Shown here: positions 20,214-42,175 of the stretch, one piece after another
How positions within the stretch are numbered: position 1 is the stretch's first letter
How the letters are laid out: every line of letters starts with the position of its first letter
From: Mytilus californianus
Lineage: Eukaryota
Length of the DNA: 64,000 nt
Assembly: GCF_021869535.1 (NCBI RefSeq)
Contig: NW_026262701.1
Location: 96,844,001 to 96,908,000, forward strand
Reading direction: 5' to 3'
Made by a program: the position numbers and the translations under genes
Notes under the pieces: generated by a model
Seen by the model: the letters and a program-made list of their open reading frames with translations, nothing else
Told to the model about the DNA's origin: nothing
Database searches by the model: none

Positions 20214-20271
20214 ATGGAATATTCAAAAAGCTTGATATTTTCTTTAGTGGTTTGTGTTTTTATCATAAATG
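20214..20271 (+). CDS. IgSF-ITIM receptor exon 1: signal peptide MEYSKSLIFSLVVCVFIIN(G)
   Basis: ATG in context aacATGG, hydrophobic core, canonical donor G|GTAAGT at 20271/20272 in phase 1 matching the next exon. Not in the ORF track. Confidence 0.75.
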
Positions 20272-21561
20272 GTAAGTGCAAAATGAACGCAGAGTGAATA
20301 GAAGTTCACTTTCAGGAAATCAAAACAAACGTGTGACGCTCCCGAAAAAGGGGATCGTCATGAGAATATCACTGAAAAGGTCTTTGCCTTTATAGATATT
20401 GATATAAATAGCCGACTTAAGTTTTACACGCACACATATTACAGCTTAGATAATTTTCCCTGATATAGTATTGTAACATGTCGGGTAGCTTTTCTCGACA
20501 TCACCCATTTGCTTTAAAGCTTTGTTCAATATCTAAAATCGGAGGGTATCATAAAGTGTTGCTTTGTTTTATTTAAAAATTAAGGAAAAATATCTTGATA
20601 CATTTAAAATTTGCTAGTGCATGTCAAAATGCATGTAGAGAGAAAGTATTTCTTTTCAATTAAAATGTCATCATGTCATACTGACAAATCTGACATCAGG
20701 AAATGCTGTTTTACAGCATTTGCTGTCAATCTTATCACAACCTAAAGATTAAATTAAAATACAGTGGTTTACGCTATTTAGATTTCCGGGATAGTTTTTG
20801 TTTCAATTTGGAGATTGAAAAAGTCATATCCTGTGACATTTTTCTATGCACATGCCTAGAATTTTACGCAGCCTAATTAAGCAAATGTTATAATTTTCTA
20901 AGATCTCCTCTTATAAAATATGACAATACTGACATTACTGTTCTAGTTTGACTTCCTCACTCTGATGAAAACCTACTGTAAAGTTACATCGTCAACATGT
21001 TCATGTTTTCATGCAGAAGTTGATGTACCGATCCCAACACTGCATATATAGATATCTGACTTTATCATGTGATGTTTGTATGTAAAATAACATGTAATAT
21101 CATACACAGTAAAACAAGTTTTTAGTCTAAAAGGTTACTTGTCAAAGGCTTAAACAATACCCATTGTTCATAGTTGTTAAAGATGTCCCCCAACATGCTC
21201 AAGTCAGGTAATTTCAGTCATTTTGTTGACATAACATTAAATGAAGGGACTTCAAGCTCAAAGGATGGACATTACCAGTAAGAATTATATTACTATAAAA
21301 AGGGAGTTGTCGTACATGTACAACATCTCTTTTTGGTATTGCATTTGATTGCGATAAATTATAAAAAATTTCTTACCAAGCCCCTTGTTCTACATTTTGT
21401 TCTACTGGACAAGTCTTCCTTCCAAAATACATGAATGAATATGTAAAAGTGTATGTACAAAAACTTGAAAACTGGCACCAGTATGCATATCTGCTTATCT
21501 CAACTTGGCTTAATTTGAATTATTTTGTAAAAAATAGGGTACATGTACATATTTATATATA

Positions 21562-21766
21562 CTGTAAATTCTGAAATTATTGCGTGCATTTATTATTGCG
21601 ATTTTGTCATTTTAGACCAAAATGCAATTTGAATTTTTGCAATATTGAGAAAAATCCTGCTTCATTCATTTAAAAATTCCAAAATGCGAGTTTAAATTAT
21701 TACGATTACAACACTGTCACATTTTTTGCAATAATAAAAACATCGCAATAATTTCCAAATTTACAG
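21562..21766. mobile_element. ~205-bp MITE (copy 2 of 3)
   Basis: TA|CTGTAAATTCTGAAATTATTGCG ... CGCAATAATTTCCAAATTTACAG|TA. Confidence 0.8.
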
Positions 21767-21891
21767 TATTCTGAAACCATGGAAATGTGATCATGAACCA
21801 CCATCCATAATATACTTTTTTTTGTACCTACATGTACCTGCTGTTTTCAGTGAAGCGATTTTCAACTGTCTCTTATTGAAGGCCCAAGATA

Positions 21892-22122
21892 CTGTAGATT
21901 CATATATTTTCATGGGTCCCAAATTTGGTGATTGGGGAAAACTTTCATACATGTATGTTTAAATTTTTGATTTCATGGTTTTGCTTAAGTCAGCAAATAT
22001 TCCTATATATAAAATTTGTAATTCGTTGAACATTTAAATTTGTGATTTCCTTACTTGTACCAACAAAAACCATGAAAAGTGATATCCAATGAATAATAAT
22101 TATATGTATAATGAATCCACAG
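21892..22122. mobile_element. MITE with CTGT(A/G)GATTCAT / ATGAATCCACAG TIRs
   Basis: TA-flanked inverted termini. A related copy lies at 36080-36286. Confidence 0.6.
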
Positions 22123-23360
22123 TAATATGTGTTCCTACGTATACCAGGCTAACATGGGAAAATTACATTCCTATCAAAAAGCTTTTTCTTTGCACTTTCA
22201 ATTTAAAAATTTTGCTCCATACCTTACCAGTAATTTGAAGTAAAAGTAGAAATTTATATTGAAAATTTATAAAAATGCATGTACATGTAACGTGTGTAAT
22301 TCTAAAATCAAATCATGAAACTTTGTGGATGATTTAATTTCATGTTTTTTTTAAAATGTAATTTGGGAAAACAGTATCATATATACCTTAGGCTTAACCA
22401 ATTCCTAAATGTCAATATATATATAAAACTACTAGTAGTGTAAAAAAGTAATAACATCTACAGTAGTAAACATTCTTTTAAAAAAACTTGTTATACAATG
22501 GTTTTACATGTTATGTAACCAAATTTACATCTAGATGCCATTAAATATAATTTGATATCCTGCATTTATCAAGTTTTTCCTAAATATAAGGTCATTGTTG
22601 TAAGAAACATCCTCCTAAACAATAGAAATCTATCCTTTTGCATTAACCATAATATCATGAATATTTAGATGTAAATTTGACAAATGTTTGATACATCCAA
22701 GTGGGTTAACATCCTCATGGATGTTACACTCCTTTAATGTTAATTTTAAAGGAAGATATTCGTATCTTGCAGGTATGCGGAAATTAGATACATTGTATGC
22801 CTGAATTAAAGTTGAAGTTGATCGGAAGTAAAAAGAAAGAAAGAAAATATAGAACATTTCAATAATAAATTATTTAATTTACATATTCAAAAATGTAATG
22901 GAACCTCTTTTCATAAACATATATCCTGTTAAAGTTGAGATGCTTGCTAGGTTCTAAACCTTCACAGACTGTAACTTGCAGCAGGTTGTCACTGAGCATT
23001 TTGAGAACATTTGACCAGATTGGTTGTACATGTATTAGTCCGTTTGGGATGTGAATTTTAAATACAAATTTACTGTAAAATATAAATTATAATTTGGATC
23101 TTTGCTGAAATATTAACGTATGACTAATAATAGACTGACTGTAAGTTCATTATGATTTTTATAAACTATAGTACTTAATCAAAAGAACAAAGATGTATTT
23201 AATTTTGTGGAAGAACCCTGATCTGTTTAGGATAAGATAGGCCAATAAAGTTGTAAAGAACTTTTTAACATTTGCTACTACAATGTATGACCACAGTTCT
23301 AAAACACTAAATCTGAAATGTTTTATTCTGATTATTCTTTTTTAAAAATTGTTTGAAACA

Positions 23361-23736
23361 TTTTTATGCTGAATTTTTCGTTTCCGTTTTCTAACTTTAG
23401 TTTGCCTCAACGAAATGTTATGAATCTTATACACAATGCTTATTACCACAAAACACAGATCAAGTTTGAATTTTGGTCACATCACTTTTACCGTTAAGTT
23501 ATTCCCCTTTACAAATGGAAAATTGCTGAATTTTTCGTTTCTGTTCTCTAACTTAAGTTTGCCTCAACCAAATGTTATGAAACCTATATATACACAATGC
23601 TTATTTGTTACCACAAAACTCAGATCAAGTAAGAATTTGGGTAGCGTAACTTTTACCGTTCTTGAGTTATGTCCCTTTATAACGTTATATGCATGCAGGG
23701 GCATCATCTGTGTCCCATGGACACATTCCCAATTTA
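23361..23736 (+). mobile_element. HINE-like element of the 161-bp family, internally deleted (~2 monomers)
   Basis: TTTTTATGC joins directly to TGAATTTTTCG. 3' end GGGGCATCATC-TGTGTCCCATGGACACA hairpin. Monomers match 30364-31300. Confidence 0.8.
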
Positions 23737-25689
23737 TTTCTATAGCTGTACAAATTAGCTTTGGACAAGTCGGGTATTGATTTTCAGAAAAGAAATTACA
23801 TGTACATTTGTAGTAAGAAATTACATGTACATTTGTAGTAAGTTTCTGTTTTATTTTGACAAAAGATTGACATGTACATGTACAATGTTTACAAAAAATG
23901 TAGGTTTATTTGTTTATGATATTAACGATAACAACTTCAACAATAAACCAAATTCATAAACTCCATGTATTTATTCTAATACTAAATGTATTTGATAAAG
24001 GTTTAAATTAGCATATTTAGGACACATTGAATTCTGACAATACTTTAATTAAAGCAAATTCATTGTTTTGACACTTGGGTAATAGATTATATCTACATTA
24101 ACCCTGGACATATGTGGAAACCTTCCAGGTTTGTATCAACACCTGTTGGTCTGAATTATCTAATTGGCTTGAGATTAAAACAGGTCTGTTTGGTAATAGA
24201 CAAGATCTTCCTGATTTTATCATCATATTGTTAGGTGTTATCTATTTAGAGTTGTCCACTTTTCAGAAAAACATACTTATCGATCAAGATTTTAGATATG
24301 AAGGAACATGCCCCAATACAATAAATACAGAGATGAATTATCCTTAATTAATGAACCTGAAATAGTTTAAATCTTGTTTATTCTATGCCTGAATACACAG
24401 GTACTTTTATGAAAGAAATTTTAAATAGATTTAGAATAGTAAATATATGCAAAAGTGTGGGAGTTGCATGTAGTAAGATGTTAAAACCTATGTACATGTA
24501 TACAGGTAGACAGGAAGTGTTACCTGTCATAACCTGAACATTGTCAGTTGTACATGATGACATGTAATTGACTTTTTATGGTTGATTTGATTATATAGGC
24601 CATGGGGTAATACAGGAAGGACTAGCTTGTATAACATTTATTGATCAAATATTTGATCTGTAGCTACCATGTCGCCCTCTGATCTTTTGTTATGTTTAAC
24701 AATAGGAAACAGAAAGTTTACAATGGAGGGTGTTCCTTGTCCTCAAATATCCTTATATCTGTAGACTTCTTATATTTACATTTGTATACAAATTCATTCT
24801 TGAATTCAATTACCAAGAAATAGTCATTTCAAGCTATAACATATTTTGCATAGAAATTTTACACATGTACAGTTTAGAAGTTTATTTGTAACGCATGTCT
24901 CAGTATACCGGTTAGGTGTTAGGCGGTTATAACCAGACTTTTAGACAGATGAGCTAAAACAAAACAACCGATTAGATTTTATGCAAATGAAGATTGTGAA
25001 AGGACAATAAGTTTTCTCTTTATGTTTGAACTTTATATTGCTGTGATTGAAAAACTCTGGGATTATTATTGTTTTTCCTTTTGGTCACTTGATTCATCAA
25101 ACAGAGAAAAATGTATATTGATAACTTTATATTAACAAAAAAATGTACTGTTCATTGTCATGTTAGGTAGTTCAATCCCACCCTTCATGTGTAAAATTAT
25201 TTTGAAAAAAATGAATGTTGTTTTAGCCTGTTAAATAAACCTCTTTTCCAAAACTTTATATTAAAGAATTGAGCTGTCATGCATTTACAAATGTATGTAA
25301 AAAATGGGAAATCCCTTTAAGAATGAAGTCATATTTGCACTCTTTATAAATAGAGTATTACTTCTTTGTGACACATTGAGTGAATTACAAAGCAAGGTAT
25401 GAGAAACTAGTATTGACATAAAATTGAGTATTTTAGTCATGACCTTTGGGAGTGGTCATGTGACACATCAGGGATATAAAAAGTCAATCATCACTCATTT
25501 AAAATACTGCACATCATTGACAATCATAAAAATCTCAATAATCACCAATAAAATACAATAAATCATTTCTGTAATTGAACATCAATTATAGGTCACCGGA
25601 AATCTCTATGAGAGATAAAACTCATGTACTTAAACATTAAATTTTATATGTTGTACAATTTTCTATACTCTTTTGGACTTCGAGTTAAG

Positions 25690-25906
25690 TGGGTCTCATT
25701 GGGGTGTAAGCGTGATGCGGGATTGAGCAATTTTTTGCAAGCTTGACATAGTCAAATTATTTTGTGTGAAAACGGGAAACGAAGTCGGGCGGAACATGTG
25801 AAATTACAAGCGCTATGATAAGCAGGATACAGGATTGGATTCTCACAAAAACAATAAGCGGGATCCGGGATCAGACCCCCCATCTCCCCGCCAATGAAAC
25901 CCCCTA
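25690..25906. mobile_element. Small MITE with GGGTCTCATTGG / CCAATGAAACCC termini
   Basis: Imperfect TIRs flanked by TTAA. Locally CpG-rich relative to the surrounding intron. Confidence 0.5.
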
Positions 25907-28806
25907 TTAAGTTCCTGAGTAGGATGTTAAAGACCCCAACTTACTAAGTTTCCACACTGACAGTTTGTGTTGTTTCATGCACACTACTCATGCTACTCAT
26001 AAACACATTAATACATGTATATCCTTATCCACACTGCACAGTTGTAAATATCAATGAATAGATATGGAACATAAAAGATTTTTACTGCAACAATGTGGGA
26101 CATATACTTGTATCGTCTTGTGAAGTGTTCAGGCTTAACTTGATTCAATCGTGTAATTTTATTATAAATTCTGAACAATTTTTCATGTAGGAAAACTTTA
26201 TTTTGTCTTGGGTTTAAATCCTCCTTGCTTGGATGAGTGGGATATTTTACAGAAGGACAGTTTACTGTCGCCTGAAATATCATGAGATACTTGGCCTGTT
26301 AATGCCTGTTATCAAGTTTCACTTTAACATAGACACCTTTTATATATTCTTTATATTTGAATATAGTTTTTTAAAACTGATATATATTCTTAATGGTGAA
26401 TTTCATTTATATGTATGTACAGTATTCATACCAAGCCGAGGTGACAAGTATTATTACTACATACATTGTATAGTAGGTTTAGTGTACAAGTTCATGGATA
26501 CATGTACATTGTATATACACTACTGTTTTCATTATTTTCCTTCAGATCTTTGTAAAATGTCACATGTGAAGTTAACACTCATTTATAAGATCTGTTGTCA
26601 GAATAGAATAGTTATTTGGGTTGAATGTTTTTAAAATGTGTGATTTAATTCTAAATCAATGAGACTGGTTATTTGTTATTTCAACCCAAGATCTAATCTT
26701 ATCATACATGCATAGATATATACTATATGTATTTAAACCATCTGAGGTCAAAAGCCCTAAGTATTTATTTAATGTAATTGGTATTCTAATGCCTGTTTAT
26801 GTGCATATAAATGTGATATTTACACAATTTAGCATAGAGAATTTGTAAATGAAGGATAGAAATTTAAATTGATATATATAATAACCCTGATATAACCCAG
26901 GTGTTGGTCATAATGCAAATTTATTTGGAGCATAGCCAGGCAGATCTACAAAATAACAATTATGTATCTGTTTTCACATCTTGTTTATTTGTTTAGAATT
27001 CTATATGGAGATTAAGATTTAGTGGTCAAAGATGCCAGATCGGAAGAAATGATCTGTAGTTCAGTATATCAAATAGAATTTTCATCAAAATTTCCTGTTT
27101 CTTTTCTTTGATGGACCTCTCTTTTTAAGACTTATCAGATCCCCGACTGACTTGTGATAAGTTAACATAAGTTTGAGTACCATTAGACTTCAAGTTTATA
27201 ATATTAGACCTGAGTGCAGGAACTATTTCACGATAAATAGCCTTTAAGCAGCTGTATATCTGACCTACTTTAATGCCAGGTATAACAAAACTTTGATTTA
27301 AGTTGATAATCAAGTGTGATAATCTCAACATTTTAAGATTAAGACAAATATTTGACTTTTGGTTTAATTCCATTGTTGTAAGCCTAAGGTCATAAGATTT
27401 TACTACATATTCTACACTACAAAATTACAACAGTTTACAAGATGAATGTTTAATTTTGTCTTCATGAGCATTTAATAAAAAGCATACTGGAGTTAACTGA
27501 GATTTGGAACAAACTGATTTTGACTCCTCAGAGTTAAAAATGCATTTCACATGTTTAACTTATAAGGTTTGACAGTAATAATTGTATTACCGGTATAGCC
27601 TATAGGAAACATTAAAAAAATGACAAGAACTAGATTCAAGTACACTTACAGAAAGAAAGTATACCATTGAATAAGATGGTAAAGAATAAAACTCAGCAGA
27701 CTCCCCGCTGTATGCAATTTTCATCTATTGTGGACTGGTTCATTGTTTTGAACCCTTTAAACATGTTAAACAGAAGAACCTTGATCATATTTTTTCATAA
27801 TTTGAAGTGTGTACATGTTTATATGACGTGTAATTTTGCAAAACATATAAGGATAGATGATATGGGTGGGCCTCATGCCAACTTATGATTACAGTGCATC
27901 TGTTATGTAATTATAGATACTATTTATCATGTTTATATCACAGTTTTTTTATCCCTGATTATAACTTCCCATATGATAAAGATTCAAACACAGATATAAT
28001 CATGTTAGTTTGTGTCCTGATTTAAACTACAGTAATGAAGAAACGCTCTATTTACCACAAGTTTAAAGGACTTCAAAGCATTGTAAAGATCCAATTATCA
28101 TACCTTATTCTGTGTTATGGAATAGTAGACATACCAGATAGGTAATTCTTTCTTATTAGGAACCTTTATCATTACCTGGTTGTTAACAGGTGTACCATGT
28201 AATGTCCTCTTACCTCCTGTTATAGTATGAGGACCTGACTGTCATTCTCCTTATAATGGGGTGTATTGTGGGTATATTGTCACTTGATGAATAGGTGCTT
28301 TATCCTCCATCTTTTAATTTGCATTCCATTCTCTTCCAAATATCCACACACATGTACATGTTTATTGAAACTGCATTAAGAATAAGTACAGATTAGAGTT
28401 ATTGACTTAAAAAAACTTTTAATAAAAGCAGTTCTTGTAACGCCCTAGACCCTTATAGTACCATGCTGTTATTTAAAATAGATTTTATAATAAAATGTTG
28501 TGTAGGTGTTGTGCTATAATTTTTTTGATATAAAAAGAAGAAGATGTGGTATGATTGCCATAGAGACAACTTTCCCCCAGAGAACAAATAACAGAAATTG
28601 ATTTTCTGTTTGAATAGTCTATGGAGTATGCTGAAGTTTAAGTAAGAACAGAAGCTTTTATGTGTTGGATGTTGGAAGTCCTAATTTTGTTGAGCACATT
28701 TCAACTTCATAATGGTCATCACTAGATCTCAAACATAAAAGATTTGAAACATTTATTGTAATTTATTTATTTGTTACTACATGTAATTGACTATTCCTTT
28801 ATTTAG

Positions 28807-29202
28807 GTATAGAAAGTATAAGTGTTCAGATACAGGCAGCGCCTTCAGATGGAATTTTAGGACCAACTAGTTTACAGTTGAAATGTTCTTTTACTACCTT
28901 GACAGGAGAAATTGTTACAGGTGTAAATATTCAGGCTAAAATAAACGGACAGTTTAAAAATATAGCAATATTTTACACTCCATCACTTCCATTAAATGCT
29001 AGCCTAACAACTGATGGCAATTATTTAACAAACAGAGTGACACTTACCAACCCAACAACTTCATCTGCAGATTCTGCTGTAATACAGTTTTCACAGATAG
29101 CCTGTGAAGATGAGAATGAGTACATGTGTAACGTAGCATATGCAGGTTCTGGTGGAAGTACTTCTGAAAATTCTGGTGTTGCTGCTAATATAATTGTTAA
29201 AG
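28807..29202 (+). CDS. IgSF-ITIM receptor exon 2: V-set-like Ig domain
   Basis: Acceptor tttag ending 28806 and donor AG|GTATGA at 29202/29203. B-strand LKC and F-strand DENEYMC motifs. Confidence 0.9.
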
Positions 29203-29639
29203 GTATGAAAAATTCACATTACAACATTGCTGTAAGTCTTCGCATTCTCCATGGAACATGTATATGTGCAAAACTACTTTGTATTAACCATGTTAACTGT
29301 ATATTGTAAATGTTTAATTTTTGAATGATGAAATCCAGCAAGAATTCTTTAATTTGTTCAACTATTTAGCTATAAATCTGAGCAAAATGTCACTTTTCAG
29401 TCAAGAAACTGTGCTTAATTGTCCTTCATCTTAAAACTGTACCCTCTGCCTTAAATCCTATCTAGAACTGCACCTGCAGTAAGGAAACAAGGACATTAGA
29501 TGTTGCTCTTGCCTTTAGATTTAAAAGAAGCAGGCTCCAAGCAGCTCAGTAATGTCAATCATGGAAAATCAAAAATGCTTAATTGTTTCTGTAGAAAAAA
29601 AACCTGTGAAAACTCTTAACAGTTCTTACCTTACTAGGT

Positions 29640-30115
29640 TGTGGGGGAGGGGGGGGACACATAAAATACTGGGCCGTCTGTCTGTCTGGTCTTGTAAGTG
29701 CACTAAATTCTTGCCAGATTTTTAAAAATTTATATCATACATGTAAGTTTATATCAGCAATGTCTCTGATAAGTTATAAAAACAGTGTTGATAAACTATT
29801 TTTAAAAGAGTAATGCCCCTTGGAAATATTAAATATATGGAAAATTTCATTGTTAGCGCTCTCATGTGTACAATTCTTGCCAGATTTTTATCAAATTTAT
29901 ATTAACAGTTTATGTCAGCACTGTCTTGGATAAGTTCGAAAAATCAGTGCCGATCTAATATTTTTAAAAGAGTTATGGCCCTTTGGAAATATTAATTATA
30001 TGGAAAATTGCATTGTAAATGCTCTCATGTGTACAATTTTTGCCAGATCAGTGCCAGTCAAATATGTTTAAAGGAGTTATGCCCTTGGAAATATTAATTA
30101 TATAACGCAGGGGAC
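29640..30115 (+). mobile_element. Degenerate HINE-like element with ~3 x ~170-bp units
   Basis: GTCT microsatellite near the 5' end. TCTTGCCAGAT / TTTTGCCAGAT recurs at ~29709, ~29875 and ~30040. Confidence 0.5.
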
Positions 30116-30176
30116 ATTGGAACTTTGTTCTTTTTTTAATTTCATGAATGTTTATTACTTGCTTATAAATAGGTTA

Positions 30177-31980
30177 ATTAGTCCCCTACCGACGAAGTCG
30201 AAGGGGGCTTTAGGTTTGCACTCTGTCCGTCTGTCCATCCGTCAGTCAGGGAAATAGGTTTTCCACACTTTTCATGCCCCGGCCATAGCAGAGGGGGCAT
30301 TAAATTTTACCCTTGTCCGTCTGTACGTCCATCCGTCCATCTGTCCGTACGTCCCAAAATTGGTTTCCGTTCTCTAACTTTAGTTTGCCTCAACCAAATG
30401 TTATGAAACTTATACACAATGCTTATCAACACAAAACACAGGTCAAGTTTAAATTTGGGTGGCGTCACTTTTACTGTTCTAGAGTTATGCCCCTTTACAA
30501 ATGGAAAAATTGCTGAATTTTTCGTTTCCGTTCTCTAACTTTAGTTTGCCTCAACCAAATGTTATGAAACTTACACACAATGCTTATTAACACAAAACAC
30601 AGGTCAAATTTGAATTTGGGTGGCGTCACTTTTACTGTTCTAGAGTTATGCCCCTTTACAGATGGAAAAATTGCTGAATTTTTTGTTTCTGTTCTCTTAC
30701 TTTAGTTTGCCTCAACCAAATGTTTTGAAACTTATACACAATGCTTATTACCACAAAACACAGATCAAGTTTGAATTTTGGTGGCGTCACTTTTACCGTT
30801 CTAGAGTTATGCCCCTTTACAAATGGAAAAATTGCTGAATTTTTCGTTTCCATTCTCTAACTTTAGTTTGCCTCAACCAAATGTTATGAAACTTGCACAC
30901 AATGCTTATAAACACAAAACACAGGTCAAATATGAATTTGGGTGGCGTCACTTTTACTGTTCTAGAGTTACGCCCCTTTACAGATGGAAAAATTGCTGAA
31001 TTTTTTGTTTCTGTTCTCTTACTTTAGTTTGCCTCAACCAAATGTTTTGAAACTTATACACAATGCTTATTACCACAAAACACAGATCAAGTTTGAATTT
31101 TGGTGGCGTCACTTTTACCGTTCTAGAGTTATGCCCCTTTACAAATGGAAAAATTGCTGAATTTTTCGTTTCCGTTCTCTAACTTTAGTTTGCCTCAACC
31201 AAATCTTTTGAAACTTATACACAATGCTTATTACCACAAAACACAGATCAAGGTTGAATTTTGGTGGCGTCACTTTTACAGATCTTGAGTTATGTCCCTT
31301 TATAACGTTATATGCAAGCGGGGGCATTATCTTTGTCCCATTGACACATTCCCAATTTTTTTCTTCACGCTTGAAGATATTGATTTGATATTTAGTGTAT
31401 TGTTTTATCATGACAAGTTACAGTTCAAGTTCAAATTTTGTTCTGGTCTGATGATTTTGTGCAGAGTAATGGTCCTTGGACTTAGAAAATTCACTAAAAT
31501 AATCAGTTTTCCGCACTTTTTTTTGTCATTCTTGAATATATTGATTTGATAATTGGTTTATAGTTTTATCATGACAAGTTACAGTTCAAGTTTGAATTTT
31601 GTTCCGGTCTGATGATTTTGTGCAGAGTTATGGTCCTTGGACTTAGAAAATTCACTCAAATAATCAGTTTTCCACCCTTTTTTTTGTCATGCTTGAAGAT
31701 ATTAATTTGAAAATTGGTATGTAGTTTTATCATGACAAGTTACAGATCAAATTCAAAGTTTGTTCTGGTCTGATGATTTTGTGCAGAGTTATGGTCACTT
31801 AAATAATCAGTTTTCAATACTTTTTTTCGTCATGCTTGAAGATATTGATTTGATATTTGTTATATAGTTTACACCAGGACAAGTTATAGATCAAGCTAGA
31901 ATTTTGTTCCAATACAATGAATTTTTAACCGGTAGGGGACTATGTATTGCCATGCAATACTCACAGAATGCTTTTGTTTT
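30177..31980 (+). mobile_element. Outer HINE-like element (~165-bp internal units) containing a nested HINE
   Basis: Perfect 12-bp subTIR AGTCCCCTACCG (30180-30191) / CGGTAGGGGACT (31930-31941). 3' hairpin GTATTGC-CAT-GCAATAC (31944-31960) and GTCY microsatellite. Units with tcatgacaagttacag repeat across 31360-31900. Confidence 0.85.
30271..31358 (+). mobile_element. Inner HINE-like element with 6 x 161-bp satellite monomers
   Basis: 5' ATGCCCC..GGGGGCAT hairpin and GTCC microsatellite. Monomers start at 30364, 30525, 30686, 30847, 31008 and 31169. 3' GCGGGGGCAT plus hairpin. Confidence 0.9.
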
Positions 31981-32022
31981 ATTAGTTGTTGATGCTTTTT
32001 ATTTACATTGAATGTATAATAG

Positions 32023-32373
32023 GTAACCCAGAAGAACCAGACAATGTACCAGTATATGTACCATCAGCTGGGATAGAAGAAGGCAATACTGTTGTCTTTA
32101 CATGTACTGGCAATGTCGGCAAACCACAAGGCAAATTCAGATGGGTGAGATACAGACGTAACTCCAATGGTGCTACTATACAGGAAACACCATATGAAAC
32201 AGAAACCACTACAGCTACTCAAATGCCAGGAACCTGTACATTTAATGGCACCAGTCAGCTGACACTGAAGATGGAACAAGAAGATAATAATGCAGTAGTT
32301 AGATGTCAGGTTGTTTATCAAGAAGTACCACAAGGAAGTTTATACAAACAGACGGATGACATAAATGTTTATT
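32023..32373 (+). CDS. IgSF-ITIM receptor exon 3: C2-like Ig domain
   Basis: Acceptor AG at 32021-32022 and donor T|GTAAGT at 32373/32374. Motifs FTCTGNVGKPQGKFRW and EDNNAVVRC. Confidence 0.9.
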
Positions 32374-32985: not shown

Positions 32986-33270
32986 ATAGTGTTAGGAATG
33001 TACAAGTAACAAAGTCTCCCACCAATCCTTCCTTTGCTGAAGGAGCAGGACCCATAACTCTTACATGTACATCAGAGGGAAATCCTGCTGTAATAAACAC
33101 AGGTTATACTTGGTACAAAGAATCCAATACCAGTGTGTCACTAGGGACTGGTTCTACATATGTCATCAGTAATGTTGTGGTTAATGAAACAGATAACTAC
33201 ATATGTGTTGCACAGAACAGTTTCAATGGACAAACATTCAACATGAACAACTCTATACACATACAAATAG
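32986..33270 (+). CDS. IgSF-ITIM receptor exon 4: I/C2-set Ig domain
   Basis: Acceptor ttttactacag ending 32985 and donor AG|GTTGGT at 33270/33271. 95 open codons with LTCTSEGNP, YTWYK and ETDNYIC. Missed by the ORF track. Confidence 0.9.
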
Positions 33271-36079: not shown

Positions 36080-36286
36080 CTGTGGATTCATTTATTTTCA
36101 TGGATACCAATTATGCGGATTACAGAAAATATGTAATTTCATCAATATTTGATGTCATTGTTTTGGCTTAGTCAGCATTTCATCCTTAATAAATTTCTTA
36201 TTTCATCGAACATTAAAATTTGTGGTTAACATATCCCCATGAAATCTACAAAAAATTGTATCTCACGAATAATGAGGTATCCACAG
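36080..36286. mobile_element. MITE related to 21892-22122
   Basis: CTGTGGATTCATT ... ATCCACAG termini and a similar interior (ttttcatgg..acca, catcgaacatt.aaatttgtg). Confidence 0.55.
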
Positions 36287-36452
36287 CAAAACTTTTATTG
36301 AAATTTCATCAAAATTCATCAAAAACAAAGGGCTTTACAAGAATCAAAGACAACTCTCACAATTACTGTTTTTTTGAGTAAAATAAGACTAAATCAAGAT
36401 CTGTATGGTGGTATATTTGGCAACTAGTGCATGATACTTTTTACTTTATTAG

Positions 36453-36536
36453 ACTTTACCACTACAACCTCAACTACAACTCCTTCTACTACTGCAGAGT
36501 CGAGTCCAACTGCAGCACCACAGCTACCCCAAAAAG
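36453..36536 (+). CDS. IgSF-ITIM receptor exon 5: Ser/Thr/Pro-rich stalk (DFTTTTSTTTPSTTAESSPTAAPQLPQK)
   Basis: Acceptor ttttactttattag and donor G|GTAAGT at 36536/36537; 84 nt, phase 1-1. Confidence 0.85.
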
Positions 36537-37714
36537 GTAAGTTTAACAAGTATATCAATGGGAGGGAAACTAATTAAAACTATTTCATTACATGAAGAAT
36601 CAAAGTAAAGCTGCATTAATAATTATCACCTGCAAGGGAATGATCACCTTATCTGATAACTATGTTAACTTAAACAGTTGTCATTTGAATGGTCAACAGA
36701 CTTAGTTACAAATCAACTTGCTTCGAAAGTGGCAAGTCCCACATAAAACTTCTTAAAGAGGTTGAGGTTAAAAGATGATAAACATGCCCCTTTTTAATGC
36801 AGGAAAAATCTATATACCTGTATTGTGCTTTGTTAAACTTGCTACATAAGGTGCAAATAGTTATAATGCTGTGTTTAGACAAGAAATGGACTAGGGGAAG
36901 TAGTTACCTATTTCATTCATCATTAAATATGTATACTGCTTTGAAGAAATGTTGGATGAATTGGCACACATTTTGGAGTTTTCTGATTATTTAATCAAAT
37001 GTTTAGCAGAGGGTACCTATTTGGTATGATCAGTTCCTTGTGCAATTCTTACAAAAATCCTTAAAACTTTAAAAAAAGGAGTGTACACAATTTGAAGTTT
37101 TACCTTCAGTTGTTTAATAAGAAAAAATTTCACAATTTTTTCCACACTTGGAATTGCAATTAAATTTGTGTAGGCCACACTAATAGCAGAAGGGGTGCAA
37201 GATATTTTGGTTTGTGCAACAGTTCGTTCATCTGTCAGTTCATCCCATATCCGGTAACAGATTTTTCGTGAATTCATTATCATGTCAACTTTAAAAATTA
37301 TTTTCAAAATTCGTGTTTTGACACCTGATTTAATTGTTTACTGAACTGTTCACTTGACAAAGAAATGTGATACTGTGATTGTTGTACAATGTACATTCTA
37401 AGGTTTAATTTTTTGTTCGAGGTAGTTTACCATAAAATTGTGGCCATATCAACTTGAAACATAACTTTTTAAATTTATGCCAAATTTCAGTTTTGACCCT
37501 GATTTCATGGTTTAATGCACATGGACACATGATTGTCCAATCAGAGCATAGTGTTGTTCATAATCATAAGTATTTTAAACAAGGATACACATTTTATGCA
37601 TTCAACTCCATCTATATACACATATTGATGTGCATTTCACATTTTGGAAGTGATATGGGTTTTTTGCCATTTTTAGGAACTTTAATAGCAACATGTTACC
37701 TAAGCATAGAAACA

Positions 37715-38065
37715 TATTAAAATGAGATGTGGCATGATTGCAAATGATACAATTATCCACCGTAGCCCACATGATGTGAATGTAAGAAACTATAGGTCAT
37801 TGTATGGTGTAAAAGCACAACATTATAACAAACAGTAGAAATAAGTTGGAAAGGATTTGACTCATCAGATCGGCTTATAGCACAATAATCTAACAAAAAG
37901 ACCAAATTTTGACACAAAGTAATGATCTAATATCAATCACTGTTATTGAAAGCTAGCTCAAAGCCATTTACAACTAATAAATACATCATGTTTTCCTAGA
38001 CTTTAATATCAATTGGTACACATCCAACAGATTTAGTGTAAAGACTTCATCAGCAGACTGACAAA
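37715..38065 (+). repeat. Deleted copy of the 39443-40095 repeat
   Basis: Shares head and tail blocks with 39443-40095. Confidence 0.6.
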
Positions 38066-38729
38066 TTTATATTTGAAGTTTAAAAGAATATTTACATACA
38101 CTTCATTATGGAATTTTTATTTTATACAAAACTATTTTAGTATTTACTCTTATAGTTAATTTCATTCTTTCATGAATTATTTTCATTTTAGACAAACTTC
38201 AGTTCTTGAAGAAACATATTTTTCTAATCATTTTTTTTATTCCATTTACTAAAGACATCAAAGTAGCTAGCAGTTAACAACTTTTTTGTACAGGGACTTT
38301 TATACGTATGACTGAAAATCTCCTACCAGATTGGTACTTATTTTAATTCAGTTTTTTTTGGAAAGAAAAGAAATTAGATAGCTGTTTGATTAATCCTGAA
38401 GGGAAAAACTATTGAAACAGATAGCAGATATTTCATTTTATTTAAGTGCTTTATAAGAAAAGCTAGACAAAAATAGTTCTATTTCACTTTCTTACATGTC
38501 TTTTCATCAACTTTAAACACTCTTTATCACGACTTAATATTCAGGGCCAAATAATGCCCATACTGAACTTATTCCTTTGGAATATCATGAAGCTCTAAGA
38601 TATCAGATATTGTCATGGAAACAGAATATAAACACATGATATGAATGTATGTTGCTAGAAGTGTAAAGTTTGAAATCACTTCTGAATTTTTGACTTTATA
38701 TTTACTTTTTGTTTTTCTTATCATTAAAG

Positions 38730-38858
38730 ATAGTGGGATAGGTACTGGTGAAATTGCAGGAATAGCTGTTGGTTTAGCAGTTCTCGTCATAATAATTATA
38801 ATCATAGTTATCTTTATTCTGAGGAAAAAGAGTAGAGGGAAGGATGACAGTATTGATG
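38730..38858 (+). CDS. IgSF-ITIM receptor exon 6: transmembrane helix and RKK stop-transfer
   Basis: Acceptor AG at 38728-38729 and donor G|GTAAGA at 38858/38859. Sequence GEIAGIAVGLAVLVIIIIIIVIFILRKK. Confidence 0.9.
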
Positions 38859-39442
38859 GTAAGAACAATGGCTTTCATAAACTGCATTTTGTAATATGGC
38901 TTATAAACATGAAAAGTTTTTGAAAGTTATACAGTGTCAAATGATACATTTAATCGTGAGAACAAACAAGTGTTCTTCAGAGTCATTATAAATTGAGGAA
39001 TTCATCAAACGAAAAACCAGCCAATTGATCACAAAATTGCACATTAGAAAGATATTGCAAACAGTTAACTTTATTACACATTTAGTTAGAAAACAAAATA
39101 TTTGAATGCTAACTGTTGAAAGGATTCTCGTAATGAAGCCATTCGTCCATTTCAACAGAATGTGTTTTGCTCTTGGAGACCAAGGTCAGGCAAATAAGTT
39201 GTGAACATATATAGAAGATAATGTTAATACTTCGTATGAATGTTCCCTTTTTAGCTTGGCCTAAAAGAGTTTTGTCAAGCTTAAGAAATAAAATCTCAGT
39301 TATGAAGAAAACATCAAATTAATTGTTGAACACTAAATACCCTTAATCTGAATGCCAAATTTGTTACATCTCTTACTTGTCAATTACATATATATCTGTG
39401 ATACTTATTTTCTTGTCCTCTGCCATGTAAATATAGAAATAA

Positions 39443-40095
39443 GAGAGGTGTGGTATGATTGCCAATGTGACAACTATCCACCAAAGTTCAAATGAAGTGG
39501 ATGTAAGCAATTACAGGCAACCATACAGCCTTCAACAATGAGAAAAATCCATACAGTATAGTGGGCTGTAAAAAGCGTGACTTGAAAAATATGAATAAAT
39601 GCAATTTAGAAAGCAAATGGCCTAATTTATAACAAAAAAATTTACGAAAAAAAAACCAAATATGACACACGAACCAATGACAACCTTTTAAGTACAGGCT
39701 CCTGACTTGGAACAGGCACATAAAGAATGTGGTGGGGTTAAACATGTTTGTGAGCACAACATAAGAACAAACTATAAAAATCAGTTGAAAAAGGCTTAAC
39801 TCATCAGATGAATACAAAGCAGAAAAACATCAAACAAAAACACAGACCAGACGTGGCAGGGGATTTATACATCCCTCATTCCTAACAACAAAAAAGACAC
39901 TAAGTACAGATCTGAGAGGACTCGTAGTTACCGACAGCTAGTTCACAGCCTTCAAAGCCCATAACAACTAATAAAAAAAAGTCATGTATCTAAGACTGAA
40001 ATATCAATCAACTCACATCCAACATCCAATGGATTTAGTGTAAAGACGTCATTAACAGTCAGAGAAAAGCATGATCTTGTGCAATGCCAAAATTC
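39443..40095 (+). repeat. Dispersed repeat family starting (a)gatgtggtatgattgccaatgagacaact; longest copy
   Basis: The head motif recurs at ~924, ~28538 and ~37720, and in reverse at ~54865, ~61085 and ~61465. Region 37715-38065 shares further downstream blocks (cttgactcatcagat, atccaacagatttagtgtaaagac). Confidence 0.7.
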
Positions 40096-40364
40096 ATTGT
40101 TGAATTCTGAATTGTTAAGGTCAAGGTGAAAACTGAGTTTAACACTACACTTCCAACTACTCAATATATTTCCAGTGCATAAAATCCAATTGAAGATATT
40201 TAGTAGTTCAGATGTCATTAGAATGGCTAGATGTATGGTCATGGTCATATGTACTAGTCTGTAGGTTCAAGAAGTATATGCTCTCAAATTTTGTGGCCTT
40301 TTCTTCCAAATGGGACAGGCTTCAGTTCAAAAATGGTAATAATTTCTTACAATTTTACTTTCAG

Positions 40365-40386
40365 AACCACCAGAGAAACCAAGAAA
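40365..40386 (+). CDS. IgSF-ITIM receptor exon 7: 22-nt micro-exon (EPPEKPR)
   Basis: Strong acceptor ttttactttcag and donor AA|GTAAGT. Its phase 1-to-2 change is what is needed to put exons 8-9 in frame. Confidence 0.75.
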
Positions 40387-41679
40387 GTAAGTTTCCTTTT
40401 GTATCTTATATTGTACAATTAAATGCAATTTTCTTAACCTTATTTTTCCTTTTTATATAGAAAACTGGAAAAAATATTATATCTATTGACTATATAAATA
40501 AATATGAATTCTCAGTGGATTGCTAAAAAGATACTTTTGCAAAGTATTTTGTGATTGTGTCAACTGCCAGCCAAGCTAAGAAAGTACTTTTGTTGCCTAC
40601 GACGTTTTCATCCGTGTTGTATTTTGTTAATTCACAATTTCCCAAAACAGCTTTACAGAAGTAAATAAAACACAGATTCTTCCACAGAATATAAAGTTGT
40701 GATCATGCATCTGATTATTAATCTCATACCAAATTATGGTCGTTTACCATTTCTGATTATAAAAAGAGAAGAAACCAAGGGGACAATCTAAAAATGAAAA
40801 GTCCAATGAAAACAGGACAACAGAATGGCAAGAAAGAATAAGTAATGAAAAGACAAACAACATTAACAGAACATTGCACAGAAAGCTAAAGATTGAGCAA
40901 CAGGAACTTCACCCAAAATTGTAGGTGAACTCAGATGTTCTAGAAGGGTCACAGTTCCTGCACCTTTAGTGACGCTCATCATGTTACACATGTAACAAGA
41001 CATTGATGAGTCATATCCAGTGATTAGTCATCATATAGCAGCGAATTGATAATGGCTCTTGTCTAAGCCTAAGATCCACAAAATTCTATTCCATCGGTAC
41101 ACATAAATTTCTTCAACCCTAAATATGACCGTATTGGAAAGTTTAAAATGACCATGAAATGTTCCAGACAAAAAAAAGACTTGAAATAAGAAACAAAAAA
41201 CCAAAAAAACACAATTACTTTACTGAAAACTAAAGCAGTTTTCCTATTCTGCTAGTGGCATCTGTTATGTTGCTCATTGAAGATAAAACATTGCATTCTG
41301 TCATGTCCAAATTGAGGAAAAAGGGTGGTACCGTTGTTACTCATTGGTACTTACAGTATTACATATACTTGGTATATGCAGATGGACCATTTTCTGCTTA
41401 TAACAGTTAGGCCATTTTGGATTTAGGTTTTGTTCATCAGCAACTTCTTTAAAACAGAATGGCAGAATTCCACAAAATTTAATTTGCACAGATTTTTTCT
41501 ACAGGAAGTGAAATTGTAGTTCCACATCCCAAAACACAGACTTGCCTATCTCTTGTTATAGTATTTTGAGACAGCAGGTGACACATGTCTATCTTCAAAG
41601 ACTCACACATTTTTCATCAATAAAATAGCCTAGTTTTAACATGAAAATATTATTATTGTTGTGTTTAATTTATTTTCAG

Positions 41680-41740
41680 CAACCTGAGTTTTGTAGATAG
41701 AAAAGATGCATTAGGGGATAAGAATGGTCCATTTAATAAT
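41680..41740 (+). CDS. IgSF-ITIM receptor exon 8: cytoplasmic spacer (NLSFVDRKDALGDKNGPFNN)
   Basis: Acceptor tttattttcag and donor AAT|GTAAGT; phase 2-0. Confidence 0.75.
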
Positions 41741-42049
41741 GTAAGTATAGGATACTATCTGAAGATGTAGACAGGTATTTTTACCTTATCTCATAATAAA
41801 ATCTTACAAAACAAATGTTCAGTTTAATTTAACTTTCTTTTATCATGTGGGAGGGGAGAGAACTCATTTCTGACTAGATAGGAGAAATTGTTGCAAGAAA
41901 GAACAATCCAATCTGAATGTTTATAGTTCAATACAAAATAACATAAAAATAACATAAAATAAAGAGTTATTTATATATTATATATTGAAGTATTAACATT
42001 GTGTTATAAGATGAAATGGTAACCTTGTATGGTTTTTATTTTATTTCAG

Positions 42050-42175
42050 CATAATATACATTATGCAGATTTGAATTTTGATGATCGTCCAAGAAGTCGG
42101 AAACCATTACAGTTGAGTCAAGATTCTGATTTAGATCATGCACCATACGCTGAAGTGATGATGCCAAGAGTGTAA
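42050..42175 (+). CDS. IgSF-ITIM receptor exon 9: HNIHYADLNFDDRPRSRKPLQLSQDSDLDHAPYAEVMMPRV-stop
   Basis: Acceptor tttttattttatttcag in phase 0 and stop TAA at 42173-42175. Contains the ITIM-consensus IHYADL and a second motif APYAEV. Confidence 0.85.
   Translation, partial: HNIHYADLNFDDRPRSRKPLQLSQDSDLDHAPYAEVMMPRV

What the first reader, a model, noticed from the sequence alone, without database searches (positions are those of the whole stretch)
20214..42175. Complete V-C2-I Ig receptor with tandem ITIM-type tail: a candidate invertebrate inhibitory (SIRP/Siglec/PD-1-like) receptor
Seen: nine exons splice into a 503-aa type I membrane protein. The last exon, invisible in the ORF track, has IHYADL (exact I/V/L/S-x-Y-x-x-L/V ITIM consensus) and APYAEV 28 residues later. 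Known: paired ITIM/ITSM motifs with roughly this spacing engage the tandem SH2 domains of SHP-1/SHP-2 in vertebrate inhibitory receptors, and Hydractinia Alr2 is an Ig receptor with an ITIM-like tail. Inference: a haemocyte checkpoint or self-recognition receptor. If the host is a mussel, this would be relevant to tolerance of allogeneic transmissible cancer cells.
Basis: partly seen in the sequence, partly recalled or inferred. Interest (0 to 1): 0.75.

Follow-up and report, generated by a model that had tools for sequence, protein, structure and literature searches.

The report
Mussel nectin-like receptor, ITIM/ITSM tail
This is a real, transcribed California-mussel gene for a three-Ig-domain surface receptor whose tail carries two conserved tyrosine motifs of the type that dock SHP-type phosphatases; the receptor type is already known in bivalves, but this family, found across molluscs, has not been studied.

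Summary
Nine GT..AG exons (20214-42175, + strand) give a 503-aa type I membrane protein identical to RefSeq "uncharacterized protein LOC127700327" of Mytilus californianus. RNA reads confirm the junctions of exons 5-9 in two species.

The outer part folds like nectin/nectin-like adhesion molecules (V-C2-C2), not like SIRP, Siglec or PD-1.

The tail is the most conserved part of the protein:
- IHYADLNF is an exact ITIM with a hydrophobic residue at pY+5.
- A second tyrosine lies 28 residues later. It reads APYAEV in this allele but TPYAEV (exact ITSM) in other M. californianus transcripts and in four other Mytilus species.
- Both tyrosines, their spacing (23-30 residues), a juxtamembrane EPPEKPRNN motif and a C-terminal MPxV recur in scallops, oysters, pearl oyster, Solemya and two gastropods.

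These residues match published SHP2 SH2 preferences, so a phosphatase-docking adhesion or inhibitory receptor is the best reading. Binding, haemocyte expression and any self-recognition or cancer role are untested.

ITIM-bearing Ig receptors are already shown experimentally in oysters, and this scan found others in this genome on other DNA, so this is a new member of a known kind.

An extra finding: mytilid paralogues share about 80% identical ectodomains but carry a different transmembrane segment (polar Gln/Glu) and tail. Ectodomains group by lineage rather than by tail type, which suggests paired receptors.

The parts
20214..20271 (+). Exon 1: start codon and signal peptide (MEYSKSLIFSLVVCVFIIN), ends in phase 1
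   Evidence: The same 58-nt exon is present in M. edulis and M. trossulus.
28807..29202 (+). Exon 2: domain 1, V-like Ig (Cys46, Cys127 in a D-x-x-x-Y-x-C motif, extra conserved Cys119)
   Evidence: Pfam V-set E 0.007. Only 86 relatives at E<=0.001 among 1.84 billion proteins. The AF2 model superposes on nectin-1. It is the least conserved Ig domain: 70-80% identity among Mytilus.
32023..32373 (+). Exon 3: domain 2, C2-set (CD80-like C2-set_2)
   Evidence: Pfam PF08205 E 2.1e-11. Invariant Cys179, Cys223 and Cys246.
32986..33270 (+). Exon 4: domain 3, Ig_3 / I-set-like
   Evidence: Pfam Ig_3 E 4.6e-10, I-set E 4.8e-4.
36453..36536 (+). Exon 5: Thr/Ser/Pro-rich stalk
   Evidence: The joint to exon 6 is seen in RNA reads and contigs.
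38730..38858 (+). Exon 6: transmembrane helix (no charged residue) and basic stop-transfer RKKSRGK
   Evidence: Joints 36536|38730 and 38858|40365.
40365..40386 (+). Exon 7: 22-nt micro-exon encoding the conserved juxtamembrane motif EPPEKPR
   Evidence: Joints with 7 and 8 reads, plus contigs of three runs. The motif is invariant or near-invariant in 17 mollusc homologues.
41680..41740 (+). Exon 8: 61-nt cytoplasmic linker exon
   Evidence: Joints 40386|41680 and 41740|42050.
42050..42175 (+). Exon 9: tail with both tyrosine motifs, PRSRKP, C-terminal MPRV and the TAA stop. The 3' UTR continues beyond 42400.
   Evidence: 16 junction reads, and transcript contigs that run past 42400. Translation.
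42056..42079 (+). Motif 1: I465-H-Y467-A-D-L-N-F472. Exact ITIM with hydrophobic pY-2 and aromatic pY+5.
   Evidence: Y, A, D, L and F are invariant in the 10-sequence alignment. Pattern [ILM]xY[AS]x[LF]x[FL] in 17 species.
42140..42157 (+). Motif 2: A493-P-Y495-A-E-V498. A G>A variant at 42140 gives T493, which makes TPYAEV, an exact ITSM.
   Evidence: Variant seen in X1, X2 and X3 contigs. Thr in all other Mytilus proteins. Thr at -2 in 12 of 17 homologues.

Best explanation
LOC127700327 encodes a nectin-like (V-C2-C2/I) single-pass cell-surface receptor.

Proposed mechanism (inferred): on engagement of its still unknown ligand, a Src-type kinase phosphorylates Tyr467 and Tyr495 in the cytoplasmic tail. 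The two phosphotyrosines then act as a bidentate docking site for the tandem SH2 domains of an SHP-1/SHP-2-type tyrosine phosphatase. The N-terminal ITIM (IHpYADLNF) would bind the N-SH2 domain and the C-terminal ITSM-type motif (T/A-P-pYAEV-M-M) the C-SH2 domain. This would bring the phosphatase to the membrane, switch it on, and dampen or reshape tyrosine-kinase signalling at cell contacts.

Shown here: the gene structure, transcription, domain folds, the motifs and their deep conservation.

Inferred from vertebrate and oyster precedent: phosphorylation, phosphatase binding, the sign of the signal and the cell type.

It is the Mytilus orthologue of a family found across molluscs.
For: Gene model and transcription.

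Ectodomain: AF2 model with pLDDT 93.5. The best structural matches are full nectin-1, Necl-4, CD155 and nectin-3 ectodomains (E down to 2.5e-16, TM 0.66/0.75). At sequence level nectin-1 is the best non-antibody PDB hit.

Tail:
- Motif 1 is an exact ITIM and motif 2 an exact ITSM in the common allele, by the consensus in PMC8631942.
- The Tyr-Tyr distance is 28 residues, against 25 in PD-1 and BTLA (PMC8631942).
- Published SHP2 rules (PMC8113834) ask for a hydrophobic pY-2, a C-SH2 consensus of (T/V/I/y)XpY(A/s/t)X(I/V/L), and a hydrophobic, often aromatic pY+5. The first motif (I, A, L, F) and the second (T, A, V, M) meet these rules.
- The order ITIM then ITSM fits the PD-1 mechanism, in which the ITIM binds N-SH2 and the ITSM binds C-SH2 (PMC6994217).

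Conservation:
- Cytoplasmic exons are 97-98% identical among Mytilus, against 70-80% for the V domain.
- Cytoplasmic dN is 0.006-0.012.
- Y467, A468, D469, L470, F472, PRS, P481, Y495, V498 and V503 are invariant from mussel to abalone. The motif table covers 17 species.
- Positions that a plain YxxPhi sorting signal does not need (pY-2, pY+1, pY+5) are conserved as well.

Other support:
- The TM helix has no charged residue, as expected for a receptor that signals through its own tail.
- Precedent: CD155alpha is a nectin-like receptor whose ITIM is phosphorylated by Src and recruits SHP-2 (PMC7037299). Oyster ITIM Ig receptors inhibit haemocyte responses, and one binds SHIP2 (PMC11841013).
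Against: - No experiment or data set here shows tyrosine phosphorylation, binding of any SH2 protein, or expression in haemocytes.
- The reference allele has Ala, not Thr, at pY-2 of the second motif. Ala is outside the published C-SH2 consensus.
- M. gigas has a one-residue insertion in motif 2, and Pinctada has His at -2.
- YADL and YAEV also fit YxxPhi adaptor-protein sorting signals.
- ITIM-bearing adhesion receptors such as CD155, PECAM-1 and SIRPalpha can signal positively through SHP-2, so 'inhibitory' is not implied by the motifs alone.
Confidence: 0.62

Rival explanations
1. It is mainly a cell-cell adhesion molecule of epithelia, nerve or other tissues, a molluscan nectin/CADM counterpart. 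The tyrosine motifs act chiefly as YxxPhi sorting or endocytosis signals for clathrin adaptors, with no dedicated phosphatase recruitment and no immune role.
For: - The ectodomain is nectin-like by fold.
- Automatic names of homologues are 'cell adhesion molecule 1/2/3-like' and 'nectin-like'.
- The family occurs across bivalves and gastropods with a very constrained tail, typical of a housekeeping adhesion or signalling molecule.
- The CD155alpha tail also binds the mu1B clathrin adaptor subunit for basolateral sorting (PMC7037299).
- Both motifs fit YxxPhi.
Against: - Residues that adaptor binding does not need are conserved: hydrophobic pY-2, small pY+1, hydrophobic or aromatic pY+5, and Thr at -2 of motif 2. 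So is the 23-30-residue spacing. All fit tandem-SH2 docking (PMC8113834, PMC8631942).
- The tail lacks the C-terminal motifs that I recall for nectins (E/A-x-Y-V) and Necls (EYFI). It ends MPRV.
- In mytilids the family has expanded into forms with other tails and into secreted forms, which is unusual for a plain adhesion molecule.
Confidence: 0.22
2. It is a polymorphic self/non-self (allorecognition-type) receptor of haemocytes, with the V domain as the variable recognition surface.
For: - The V domain is the fastest-evolving Ig domain.
- Two M. trossulus copies or alleles differ by 30% in V but are identical in the tail. M. galloprovincialis sequences differ by 14% in V. An M. edulis V domain is identical to one from M. 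galloprovincialis.
- Ectodomain exons appear to be exchanged among paralogues.
Against: - dN/dS of the V exon is about 0.4, so there is no gene-wide sign of positive selection.
- Alleles could not be told apart from paralogues or uncollapsed haplotypes.
- The family is old and keeps its architecture across molluscs, unlike known allorecognition genes, which are not conserved between phyla (abstract of PMC12582321).
- Solitary mussels have no known fusion or rejection biology.
- No expression or ligand data exist.
Confidence: 0.08

Closest known systems
CD155 / PVR / Necl-5, alpha isoform (vertebrate nectin-like family)
   Same: Three-Ig V-C2-C2 ectodomain of the nectin type: CD155 D1-D3 is among the top structural matches. 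It has a single TM and a cytoplasmic ITIM that is phosphorylated by Src and recruits SHP-2 (PMC7037299).
   Different: CD155 has one ITIM. The mussel protein has an ITIM plus an ITSM-type motif 28 residues apart, a conserved EPPEKPRNN juxtamembrane motif and a C-terminal MPxV. Sequence identity is only about 18-21%. No orthology was shown.
PD-1, BTLA, SIRPalpha, PECAM-1 and CD33-type Siglecs (vertebrate ITIM+ITSM receptors)
   Same: They share the order ITIM then ITSM and a spacing of about 25 residues, which allows bivalent binding of the tandem SH2 domains of SHP-1/2 (PMC8631942, PMC6994217). From memory, and not tested here, tails of the form L-x-Y-A-x-L-x-F ... T-x-Y-S-E-V/I in SIRPalpha and CD33-related Siglecs look strikingly like the mollusc consensus.
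   Different: The ectodomains differ. PD-1 has a single V domain. SIRP is V-C1-C1. Siglec and CD22 models superpose poorly (TM about 0.4), and SIRPalpha reaches 0.48. The similarity is confined to short linear motifs, so convergence cannot be separated from common descent.
Oyster IgSF inhibitory receptors CgSiglec-1, CgIgIT, CgIgIT2 and CgNCAM1
   Same: They are bivalve type I Ig receptors with cytoplasmic ITIMs. They are reported to lower cytokine expression in haemocytes, and CgNCAM1 binds the phosphatase CgSHIP2 (PMC11841013 and its references 24-26).
   Different: The domain make-up differs. CgNCAM1 has 3 Ig plus FN3 and 617 aa (PMC11841013). CgIgIT2 is described with five Ig domains (PMC11999971). 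The oyster member of the present family is another protein: P0135, 533 aa, with no FN3. I found no paper on this family. The sequences of the published oyster receptors were not at hand for a direct comparison.
Vertebrate paired receptor families (SIRPalpha/beta, KIR, Siglec-5/14)
   Same: In mytilids an ITIM-tailed gene coexists with paralogues that have about 80% identical ectodomains but a different TM, with conserved polar Gln/Glu, and a different tail. Ectodomains group by lineage rather than by tail type.
   Different: The polar TM residue is acidic, not basic. No adaptor is known. The alternative tail carries its own tyrosine motifs, so it need not be activating. The genes lie 3.9 Mb apart, not in tandem.

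Membership tests
ITIM/ITSM-bearing inhibitory Ig-superfamily receptors (functional class) | Type I membrane protein with Ig ectodomain and an uncharged TM helix | tested here: met
   Signal peptide, three Ig domains and a TM (GIAVGLAVLVIIIIIIVIFIL) without charged residues.
ITIM/ITSM-bearing inhibitory Ig-superfamily receptors (functional class) | Cytoplasmic ITIM S/I/V/L-x-Y-x-x-I/V/L (consensus from PMC8631942) | tested here: met
   IHYADL at 465-470. The motif is conserved as [ILM]xY[AS]x[LF] in 17 mollusc homologues.
ITIM/ITSM-bearing inhibitory Ig-superfamily receptors (functional class) | Second ITIM or ITSM (T-x-Y-x-x-V/I) about 25 residues downstream | tested here: inconclusive
   The window allele reads APYAEV, with Ala at -2, outside both consensus patterns. 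Other M. californianus transcripts and all other Mytilus read TPYAEV, an exact ITSM. The spacing is 28 residues here and 23-30 across the family.
ITIM/ITSM-bearing inhibitory Ig-superfamily receptors (functional class) | Tyrosine phosphorylation and recruitment of SHP-1, SHP-2 or SHIP, with an inhibitory outcome | not testable with these tools
   This needs biochemistry. Only the fit of the sequence to published SH2 preferences could be assessed (PMC8113834).
ITIM/ITSM-bearing inhibitory Ig-superfamily receptors (functional class) | Expression on immune cells (haemocytes) | not tested
   The RNA runs used are coded and their tissue is not given.
Nectin / nectin-like (Necl, CADM) family | V-C2-C2 ectodomain of the nectin type | tested here: met
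   The top Foldseek matches are nectin-1 D1-D3 (E 2.5e-16, TM 0.66/0.75), Necl-4, CD155 and nectin-3. By phmmer, nectin-1 scores E 5e-6 over residues 35-304.
Nectin / nectin-like (Necl, CADM) family | C-terminal afadin-binding E/A-x-Y-V (nectins), or 4.1-binding plus EYFI PDZ motif (Necls). These motifs are recalled from general knowledge. | tested here: not met
   The protein ends ...EVMMPRV, and all homologues end MP[RSQ]V or KHRV.
Siglecs (some homologues are auto-named CD22) | Sialic-acid-binding V-set domain with the essential Arg on strand F (general knowledge), and a Siglec-like fold | tested here: not met
   The F-strand region reads EYMCNVAY, with no Arg. CD22 and MAG D1-D3 superpose poorly (TM 0.39-0.42, rmsd about 14 A).
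SIRP family | V-C1-C1 ectodomain | tested here: not met
   D2 matches C2-set_2 at E 2e-11 and C1-set only at E 0.11. SIRPalpha gives TM 0.48, below the nectins.
PD-1 / CD28 family | Single IgV ectodomain | tested here: not met
   The protein has three Ig domains.

The most novel reading that the evidence does not exclude
This gene is the inhibitory (SHP-docking) arm of an invertebrate paired-receptor system. An ancient mollusc nectin-like ITIM/ITSM receptor has spawned paralogues in mytilid mussels with a polar-residue TM and a different tyrosine tail, plus secreted forms. Their ectodomain exons are kept alike by exon-limited gene conversion while the signalling modules stay distinct. That would be a convergent re-invention of the SIRP/KIR/Siglec logic, possibly driven by pathogens or by contact with foreign (including transmissible-cancer) cells.
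Probability: 0.3. Interest if true: 0.7.

Novelty: new member of a known kind. Interest (0 to 1): 0.45.

Why it matters
It defines a concrete, testable candidate for SHP-type phosphatase signalling in molluscs. The receptor has a nectin-like outer part, and its docking motifs have been kept from protobranch bivalves to gastropods. Their residues match what human SHP2 SH2 domains prefer, position by position.

This pushes the ITIM-then-ITSM bidentate arrangement, best known from PD-1, BTLA, SIRPalpha and Siglecs, well outside vertebrates in a single conserved family. It offers a cleaner entry point for biochemistry than the lineage-specific oyster receptors studied so far.

The mytilid paralogues with swapped TM and tail modules and homogenised ectodomains could be a model for how paired receptors arise. 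For the gene itself the practical value is modest: it is already annotated, the receptor class is known in bivalves, and function remains inferred.

Tried and rejected
- **Whole-protein query.** I did not type the 503-aa sequence. The V exon by reference gave relatives, which led to the identical RefSeq protein P0095.
- **Tail-only word search.** Querying P0095 residues 428-503 found only 7 proteins, because few 5-residue words are shared. It missed scallop, oyster and gastropod members that the profile search then found. It therefore says nothing about vertebrate tails.
- **Other copies in the window.** tblastn of the model and of the paralogue tails against the window found no second copy and no alternative tail exon. 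The alternative tail is therefore not an alternative 3' exon of this gene.
- **Exact look-ups.** Isoforms P0091 and P0094 are not on record; their longest isoforms were.
- **Positive selection on V.** dN/dS is about 0.4, so this is not supported at gene level.
- **Excess synonymous divergence in the ectodomain.** I first read ectodomain dS of 0.3-0.4 against cytoplasmic dS of 0.03-0.14 as excess divergence. Orthologous introns are only about 76% identical, so the ectodomain value is roughly neutral. The cytoplasmic value rests on very few sites.
- **Siglec, SIRP and PD-1 readings of the ectodomain.** Rejected by fold and domain type.
- **Papers.** J Immunol 2020 on CgIgIT is not held. No paper combining Mytilus, ITIM and immunoglobulin deals with such a receptor.
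- **Earlier notes of this scan.** A search by sequence was blank, which means nothing according to the operators.

Full report
**What is there.** The window is AT-rich eukaryotic DNA (GC about 0.32). I confirmed this: the protein encoded here is identical to a RefSeq protein of Mytilus californianus, located at JAKFGE010000005.1:96,864,214-96,886,175.

On the + strand nine exons with canonical AG/GT borders join into a 1512-nt CDS of 503 codons. The exons are 20214-20271, 28807-29202, 32023-32373, 32986-33270, 36453-36536, 38730-38858, 40365-40386, 41680-41740 and 42050-42175.

**Transcript evidence.** I laid one raw stranded RNA-seq run and three sets of transcript contigs (three studies, two species labels) on 36420-42400.
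- Four GT..AG joints appear with the cuts I had derived from phase and splice signals: 36536|38730 (5 reads), 38858|40365 (7), 40386|41680 (8) and 41740|42050 (16).
- All are in the orientation that means a + strand RNA, and all are present in the contigs.
- So the 22-nt and 61-nt micro-exons are real.
- The tail exon is spliced in the stated frame to the TM exon. The refutation condition 'transcripts end before exon 9 or use another frame' is not met.
- The contigs continue past 42400, so the 3' UTR is long.

Joints between exons 1-5 were not seen directly. Three things support them:
- the identical RefSeq model;
- the same nine exons in M. edulis and M. trossulus, with the same lengths except exon 3, which is 348 nt in M. 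edulis; these reproduce their annotated proteins exactly;
- an intron-less 4.7-kb transcript contig from an ENA assembly that encodes a full-length 494-aa homologue, from signal peptide to MPRV.

**The protein.** It has these parts in order:
- a signal peptide;
- D1, V-like. Pfam V-set reaches only E 0.007, with the canonical Cys46...D-x-x-x-Y-x-Cys127;
- D2, C2-set_2 (E 2e-11);
- D3, Ig_3 (E 5e-10), with I-set at 5e-4;
- a Thr/Ser/Pro stalk;
- an uncharged TM helix;
- an 82-residue cytoplasmic tail (residues 422-503).

An AlphaFold2 model of residues 20-365, built on 34 homologues, is confident (pLDDT 93.5, pTM 0.77). Its best matches among solved structures are complete three-domain ectodomains:
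- human nectin-1 (E 2.5e-16, TM 0.66 by query and 0.75 by target);
- Necl-4/CADM4, CD155/Necl-5 and nectin-3;
- CD22 and MAG align with TM about 0.4 and rmsd about 14 A;
- SIRPalpha reaches TM 0.48.

At sequence level nectin-1 is the best non-antibody PDB hit (E 5e-6 over residues 35-304). The outer part is therefore nectin/nectin-like, not SIRP-, Siglec- or PD-1-like. Two extra cysteines, Cys119 in D1 and Cys223 in D2, are conserved throughout the family. They may pair across the domain boundary, but I could not check this without coordinates.

**The tail.** Only two tyrosines lie in the tail, Y467 in N-I-H-Y-A-D-L-N-F and Y495 in H-A-P-Y-A-E-V-M-M, 28 residues apart.
- The first is an exact ITIM by the consensus quoted in PMC8631942.
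- The second has Ala at -2 in this assembly, so it is strictly neither ITIM nor ITSM.
- Position 42140 is G>A in transcript contigs of the same species label (X1, X2) and of a second species (X3). This turns Ala493 into Thr and the motif into TPYAEV, an exact ITSM.
- All 13 reads of run X14, which belongs to the study of the best DNA holder, carry the Ala codon.
- All annotated orthologues (M. trossulus, M. edulis, M. galloprovincialis) have Thr.
- The other tail differences seen in the reads are synonymous, apart from K424R.

The V exon has only 86 relatives at E<=0.001 among 1.84 billion representative proteins. Several of these, and further hits of a profile search, share the whole architecture and tail:
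- scallops (Mizuhopecten, Argopecten);
- pearl oyster (Pinctada);
- oysters (Magallana gigas, Crassostrea virginica, Ostrea edulis);
- the protobranch Solemya;
- the gastropods Haliotis and Pomacea;
- two unnamed mytilid-like transcripts from ENA.

In a 10-sequence alignment these residues are invariant: I433, E435, P436, E438, K439, P440, N442, N443, N462, Y467, A468, D469, L470, F472, P476, R477, S478, P481, Y495, V498 and V503.

Across 17 species:
- motif 1 reads [I/L/M]-x-Y-[A/S]-x-[L/F]-x-[F/L];
- motif 2 reads [T in 12; S, V, H or A in the rest]-x-Y-[A/S/T]-x-[V/I]-x-M;
- the tyrosines are 23-30 residues apart;
- the proteins end MP[R/S/Q]V.

Among Mytilus species the cytoplasmic exons are 97-98% identical, against 70-80% for V, 81-86% for C2 and 84-88% for D3. 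Cytoplasmic dN is 0.006-0.012 against about 0.1 in the ectodomain. dN/dS is about 0.4 for V, so it is relaxed but not positive. The tail is thus the most constrained part, from mussel to abalone.

**Most likely mechanism.** The conserved positions are those that SHP2's SH2 domains read. PMC8113834 states three rules:
- both SH2 domains need a hydrophobic pY-2;
- C-SH2 prefers (T/V/I/y)XpY(A/s/t)X(I/V/L);

Motif 1 supplies I/L at -2, A at +1, L at +3 and F at +5. Motif 2 supplies T at -2, A/S at +1, V/I at +3 and M at +5.

In PD-1 the downstream ITSM binds C-SH2 and recruits SHP2, while the upstream ITIM binds N-SH2 and activates it (PMC6994217). The spacing of about 25 residues is thought to allow 1:1 bivalent binding (PMC8631942). 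The mollusc tail has the same order and a similar spacing.

I therefore read the protein as a nectin-like contact receptor that, once phosphorylated, docks and activates an SHP-type phosphatase (confidence 0.62). The conserved micro-exon motif EPPEKPRNN is proline-rich and might bind a kinase SH3 domain, but that is a guess. Phosphorylation, the partner, the sign of the signal and the expressing cells are all inferred.

**Rival readings.**
- Plain adhesion molecule with YxxPhi sorting signals (0.22). This fits the nectin fold, the ancient conservation and the fact that CD155alpha's tail also binds the mu1B adaptor (PMC7037299). It does not explain conservation of pY-2, pY+1 and pY+5, nor the spacing.
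- Polymorphic self-recognition receptor (0.08). This is hinted at by large V-domain differences within species: 70% identity between two M. trossulus sequences with identical tails, and 86% within M. galloprovincialis. But alleles could not be separated from paralogues, dN/dS is below 1, and the family's spread across molluscs argues against it.
- The link to transmissible neoplasia has no evidence here.

**Comparison with what is known.**
- The nearest analogue that combines both halves is CD155alpha: nectin-like ectodomain, ITIM, Src phosphorylation, SHP-2 (PMC7037299). It has one ITIM only, and sequence identity is about 18-21%.
- The protein fails the tail criteria of nectins and Necls, because it ends MPRV.
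- It also fails the criteria tested for Siglec, SIRP and PD-1 membership.
- Bivalve ITIM-bearing Ig receptors are already described experimentally in the oyster. These are CgSiglec-1, CgIgIT, CgIgIT2, and CgNCAM1, which binds SHIP2 (PMC11841013; PMC11999971).
- Those have other domain compositions. The oyster member of the present family (P0135) appears to be a different, unstudied protein.
- This scan has also noted other ITIM/ITSM-tailed Ig receptor genes elsewhere in this genome, on other DNA.

Hence: a new member of a known kind, and already annotated as 'uncharacterized'.

**An unexpected extra.** Mytilus genomes also hold paralogues whose three Ig domains are 79-81% identical to this protein. 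That is about as close as its own orthologues, at 82-83%.
- Their stalk, TM and tail are unrelated to those of this gene (BLASTP E 0.08). The TM carries a conserved Q-L-[G/A]-E, and the tail reads ...TVYADV...IHVYSTM...DYNEIH.
- In M. californianus these are LOC127700196 and LOC127700198, at about 92.98-93.2 Mb, 3.9 Mb from this gene.
- Forms that end after D3, possibly secreted, also exist.
- The alternative TM/tail module is old. It is recognisably the same in an ENA mytilid transcript (E 3e-17).
- Yet in a maximum-likelihood tree of the ectodomains, the ITIM-type and alternative-type sequences group by lineage, not by type. AU tests reject a single clade of alternative-type ectodomains (p 1e-90) and of mytilid ITIM-type ectodomains (p 1e-6). 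These groups were named after a first quick tree had been seen.
- At DNA level the window gene and LOC127700198 are alike only within the three Ig exons (85-88%), with no alignable intron. Orthologues are collinear through the introns.
- The paralogue's ectodomain dS (0.27) is no larger than the orthologues' (0.30-0.38).

This pattern is what exon-limited gene conversion between receptors with different signalling modules would give. It is the hallmark of vertebrate paired receptors. Whether the alternative form signals in the opposite sense is unknown.

**Verdict.** Interest is moderate (0.45).

Noticed in passing
window 42140 (codon 493): A G/A polymorphism switches the -2 residue of the second tyrosine motif between Ala (reference, and all 13 reads of run X14) and Thr (X1, X2 and X3 contigs, and all other Mytilus species). 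The reference individual therefore carries the non-consensus form of an otherwise exact ITSM.
   Followed up: yes
not in the window: JAKFGE010000005.1 about 92.98-93.2 Mb (L003 and its neighbour), 3.9 Mb from this gene: Paralogues LOC127700198 and LOC127700196 have about 80% identical Ig exons but a TM with a conserved Q-L-G-E and a tail TVYADV...HVYSTM...DYNEIH. DNA similarity to the window gene is confined to the three Ig exons. Ectodomains group by lineage, not by tail type, which suggests possible paired receptors with gene conversion.
   Followed up: partly
window 39420-40220 (intron 6): A repeat covered by RNA on both strands, at 100-200x in raw reads against 3-9x for the gene's exons. 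It has many loose ends and foreign joints. It looks like a very abundant transcribed transposable-element family, not part of this mRNA.
   Followed up: no
window 29706-31796 (intron 2): Three tandem arrays of units of about 161-163 bp: 30363-31302 (5.8 copies, 92% match), 31349-31796 (2.8 copies) and 29706-30048 (2.1 copies). A related unit lies in the orthologous M. edulis intron (L004 about 10483-10805). This accounts for the repeated short ORFs in the ORF list.
   Followed up: partly
P0097 versus P0098 (M. trossulus), P0129 versus P0131 (M. galloprovincialis), P0100 (M. edulis): V domains within a species differ as much as between species: 70% and 86% identity, with identical tails. An M. 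edulis V domain is 100% identical to one M. galloprovincialis sequence. The cause could be alleles, haplotigs or recent paralogues; this was not resolved.
   Followed up: partly
protein residues 119 and 223 (window about 29101-29103 and 32235-32237): One extra cysteine in D1 (E-F loop) and one in D2 (before strand E) are conserved in the whole family.
   Followed up: no
window 37620-38020 and 38420-38620 (intron 5): Further short stretches with RNA and contig depth on both strands and with variant letters. They are probably dispersed repeats.
   Followed up: no
L006, L007 (ENA assemblies ERZ27229297 and ERZ27229290): Intron-less contigs from an unnamed, mytilid-like organism encode both an ITIM-type homologue (494 aa) and an alternative-tail homologue (460 aa). 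The source species was not identified.
   Followed up: partly
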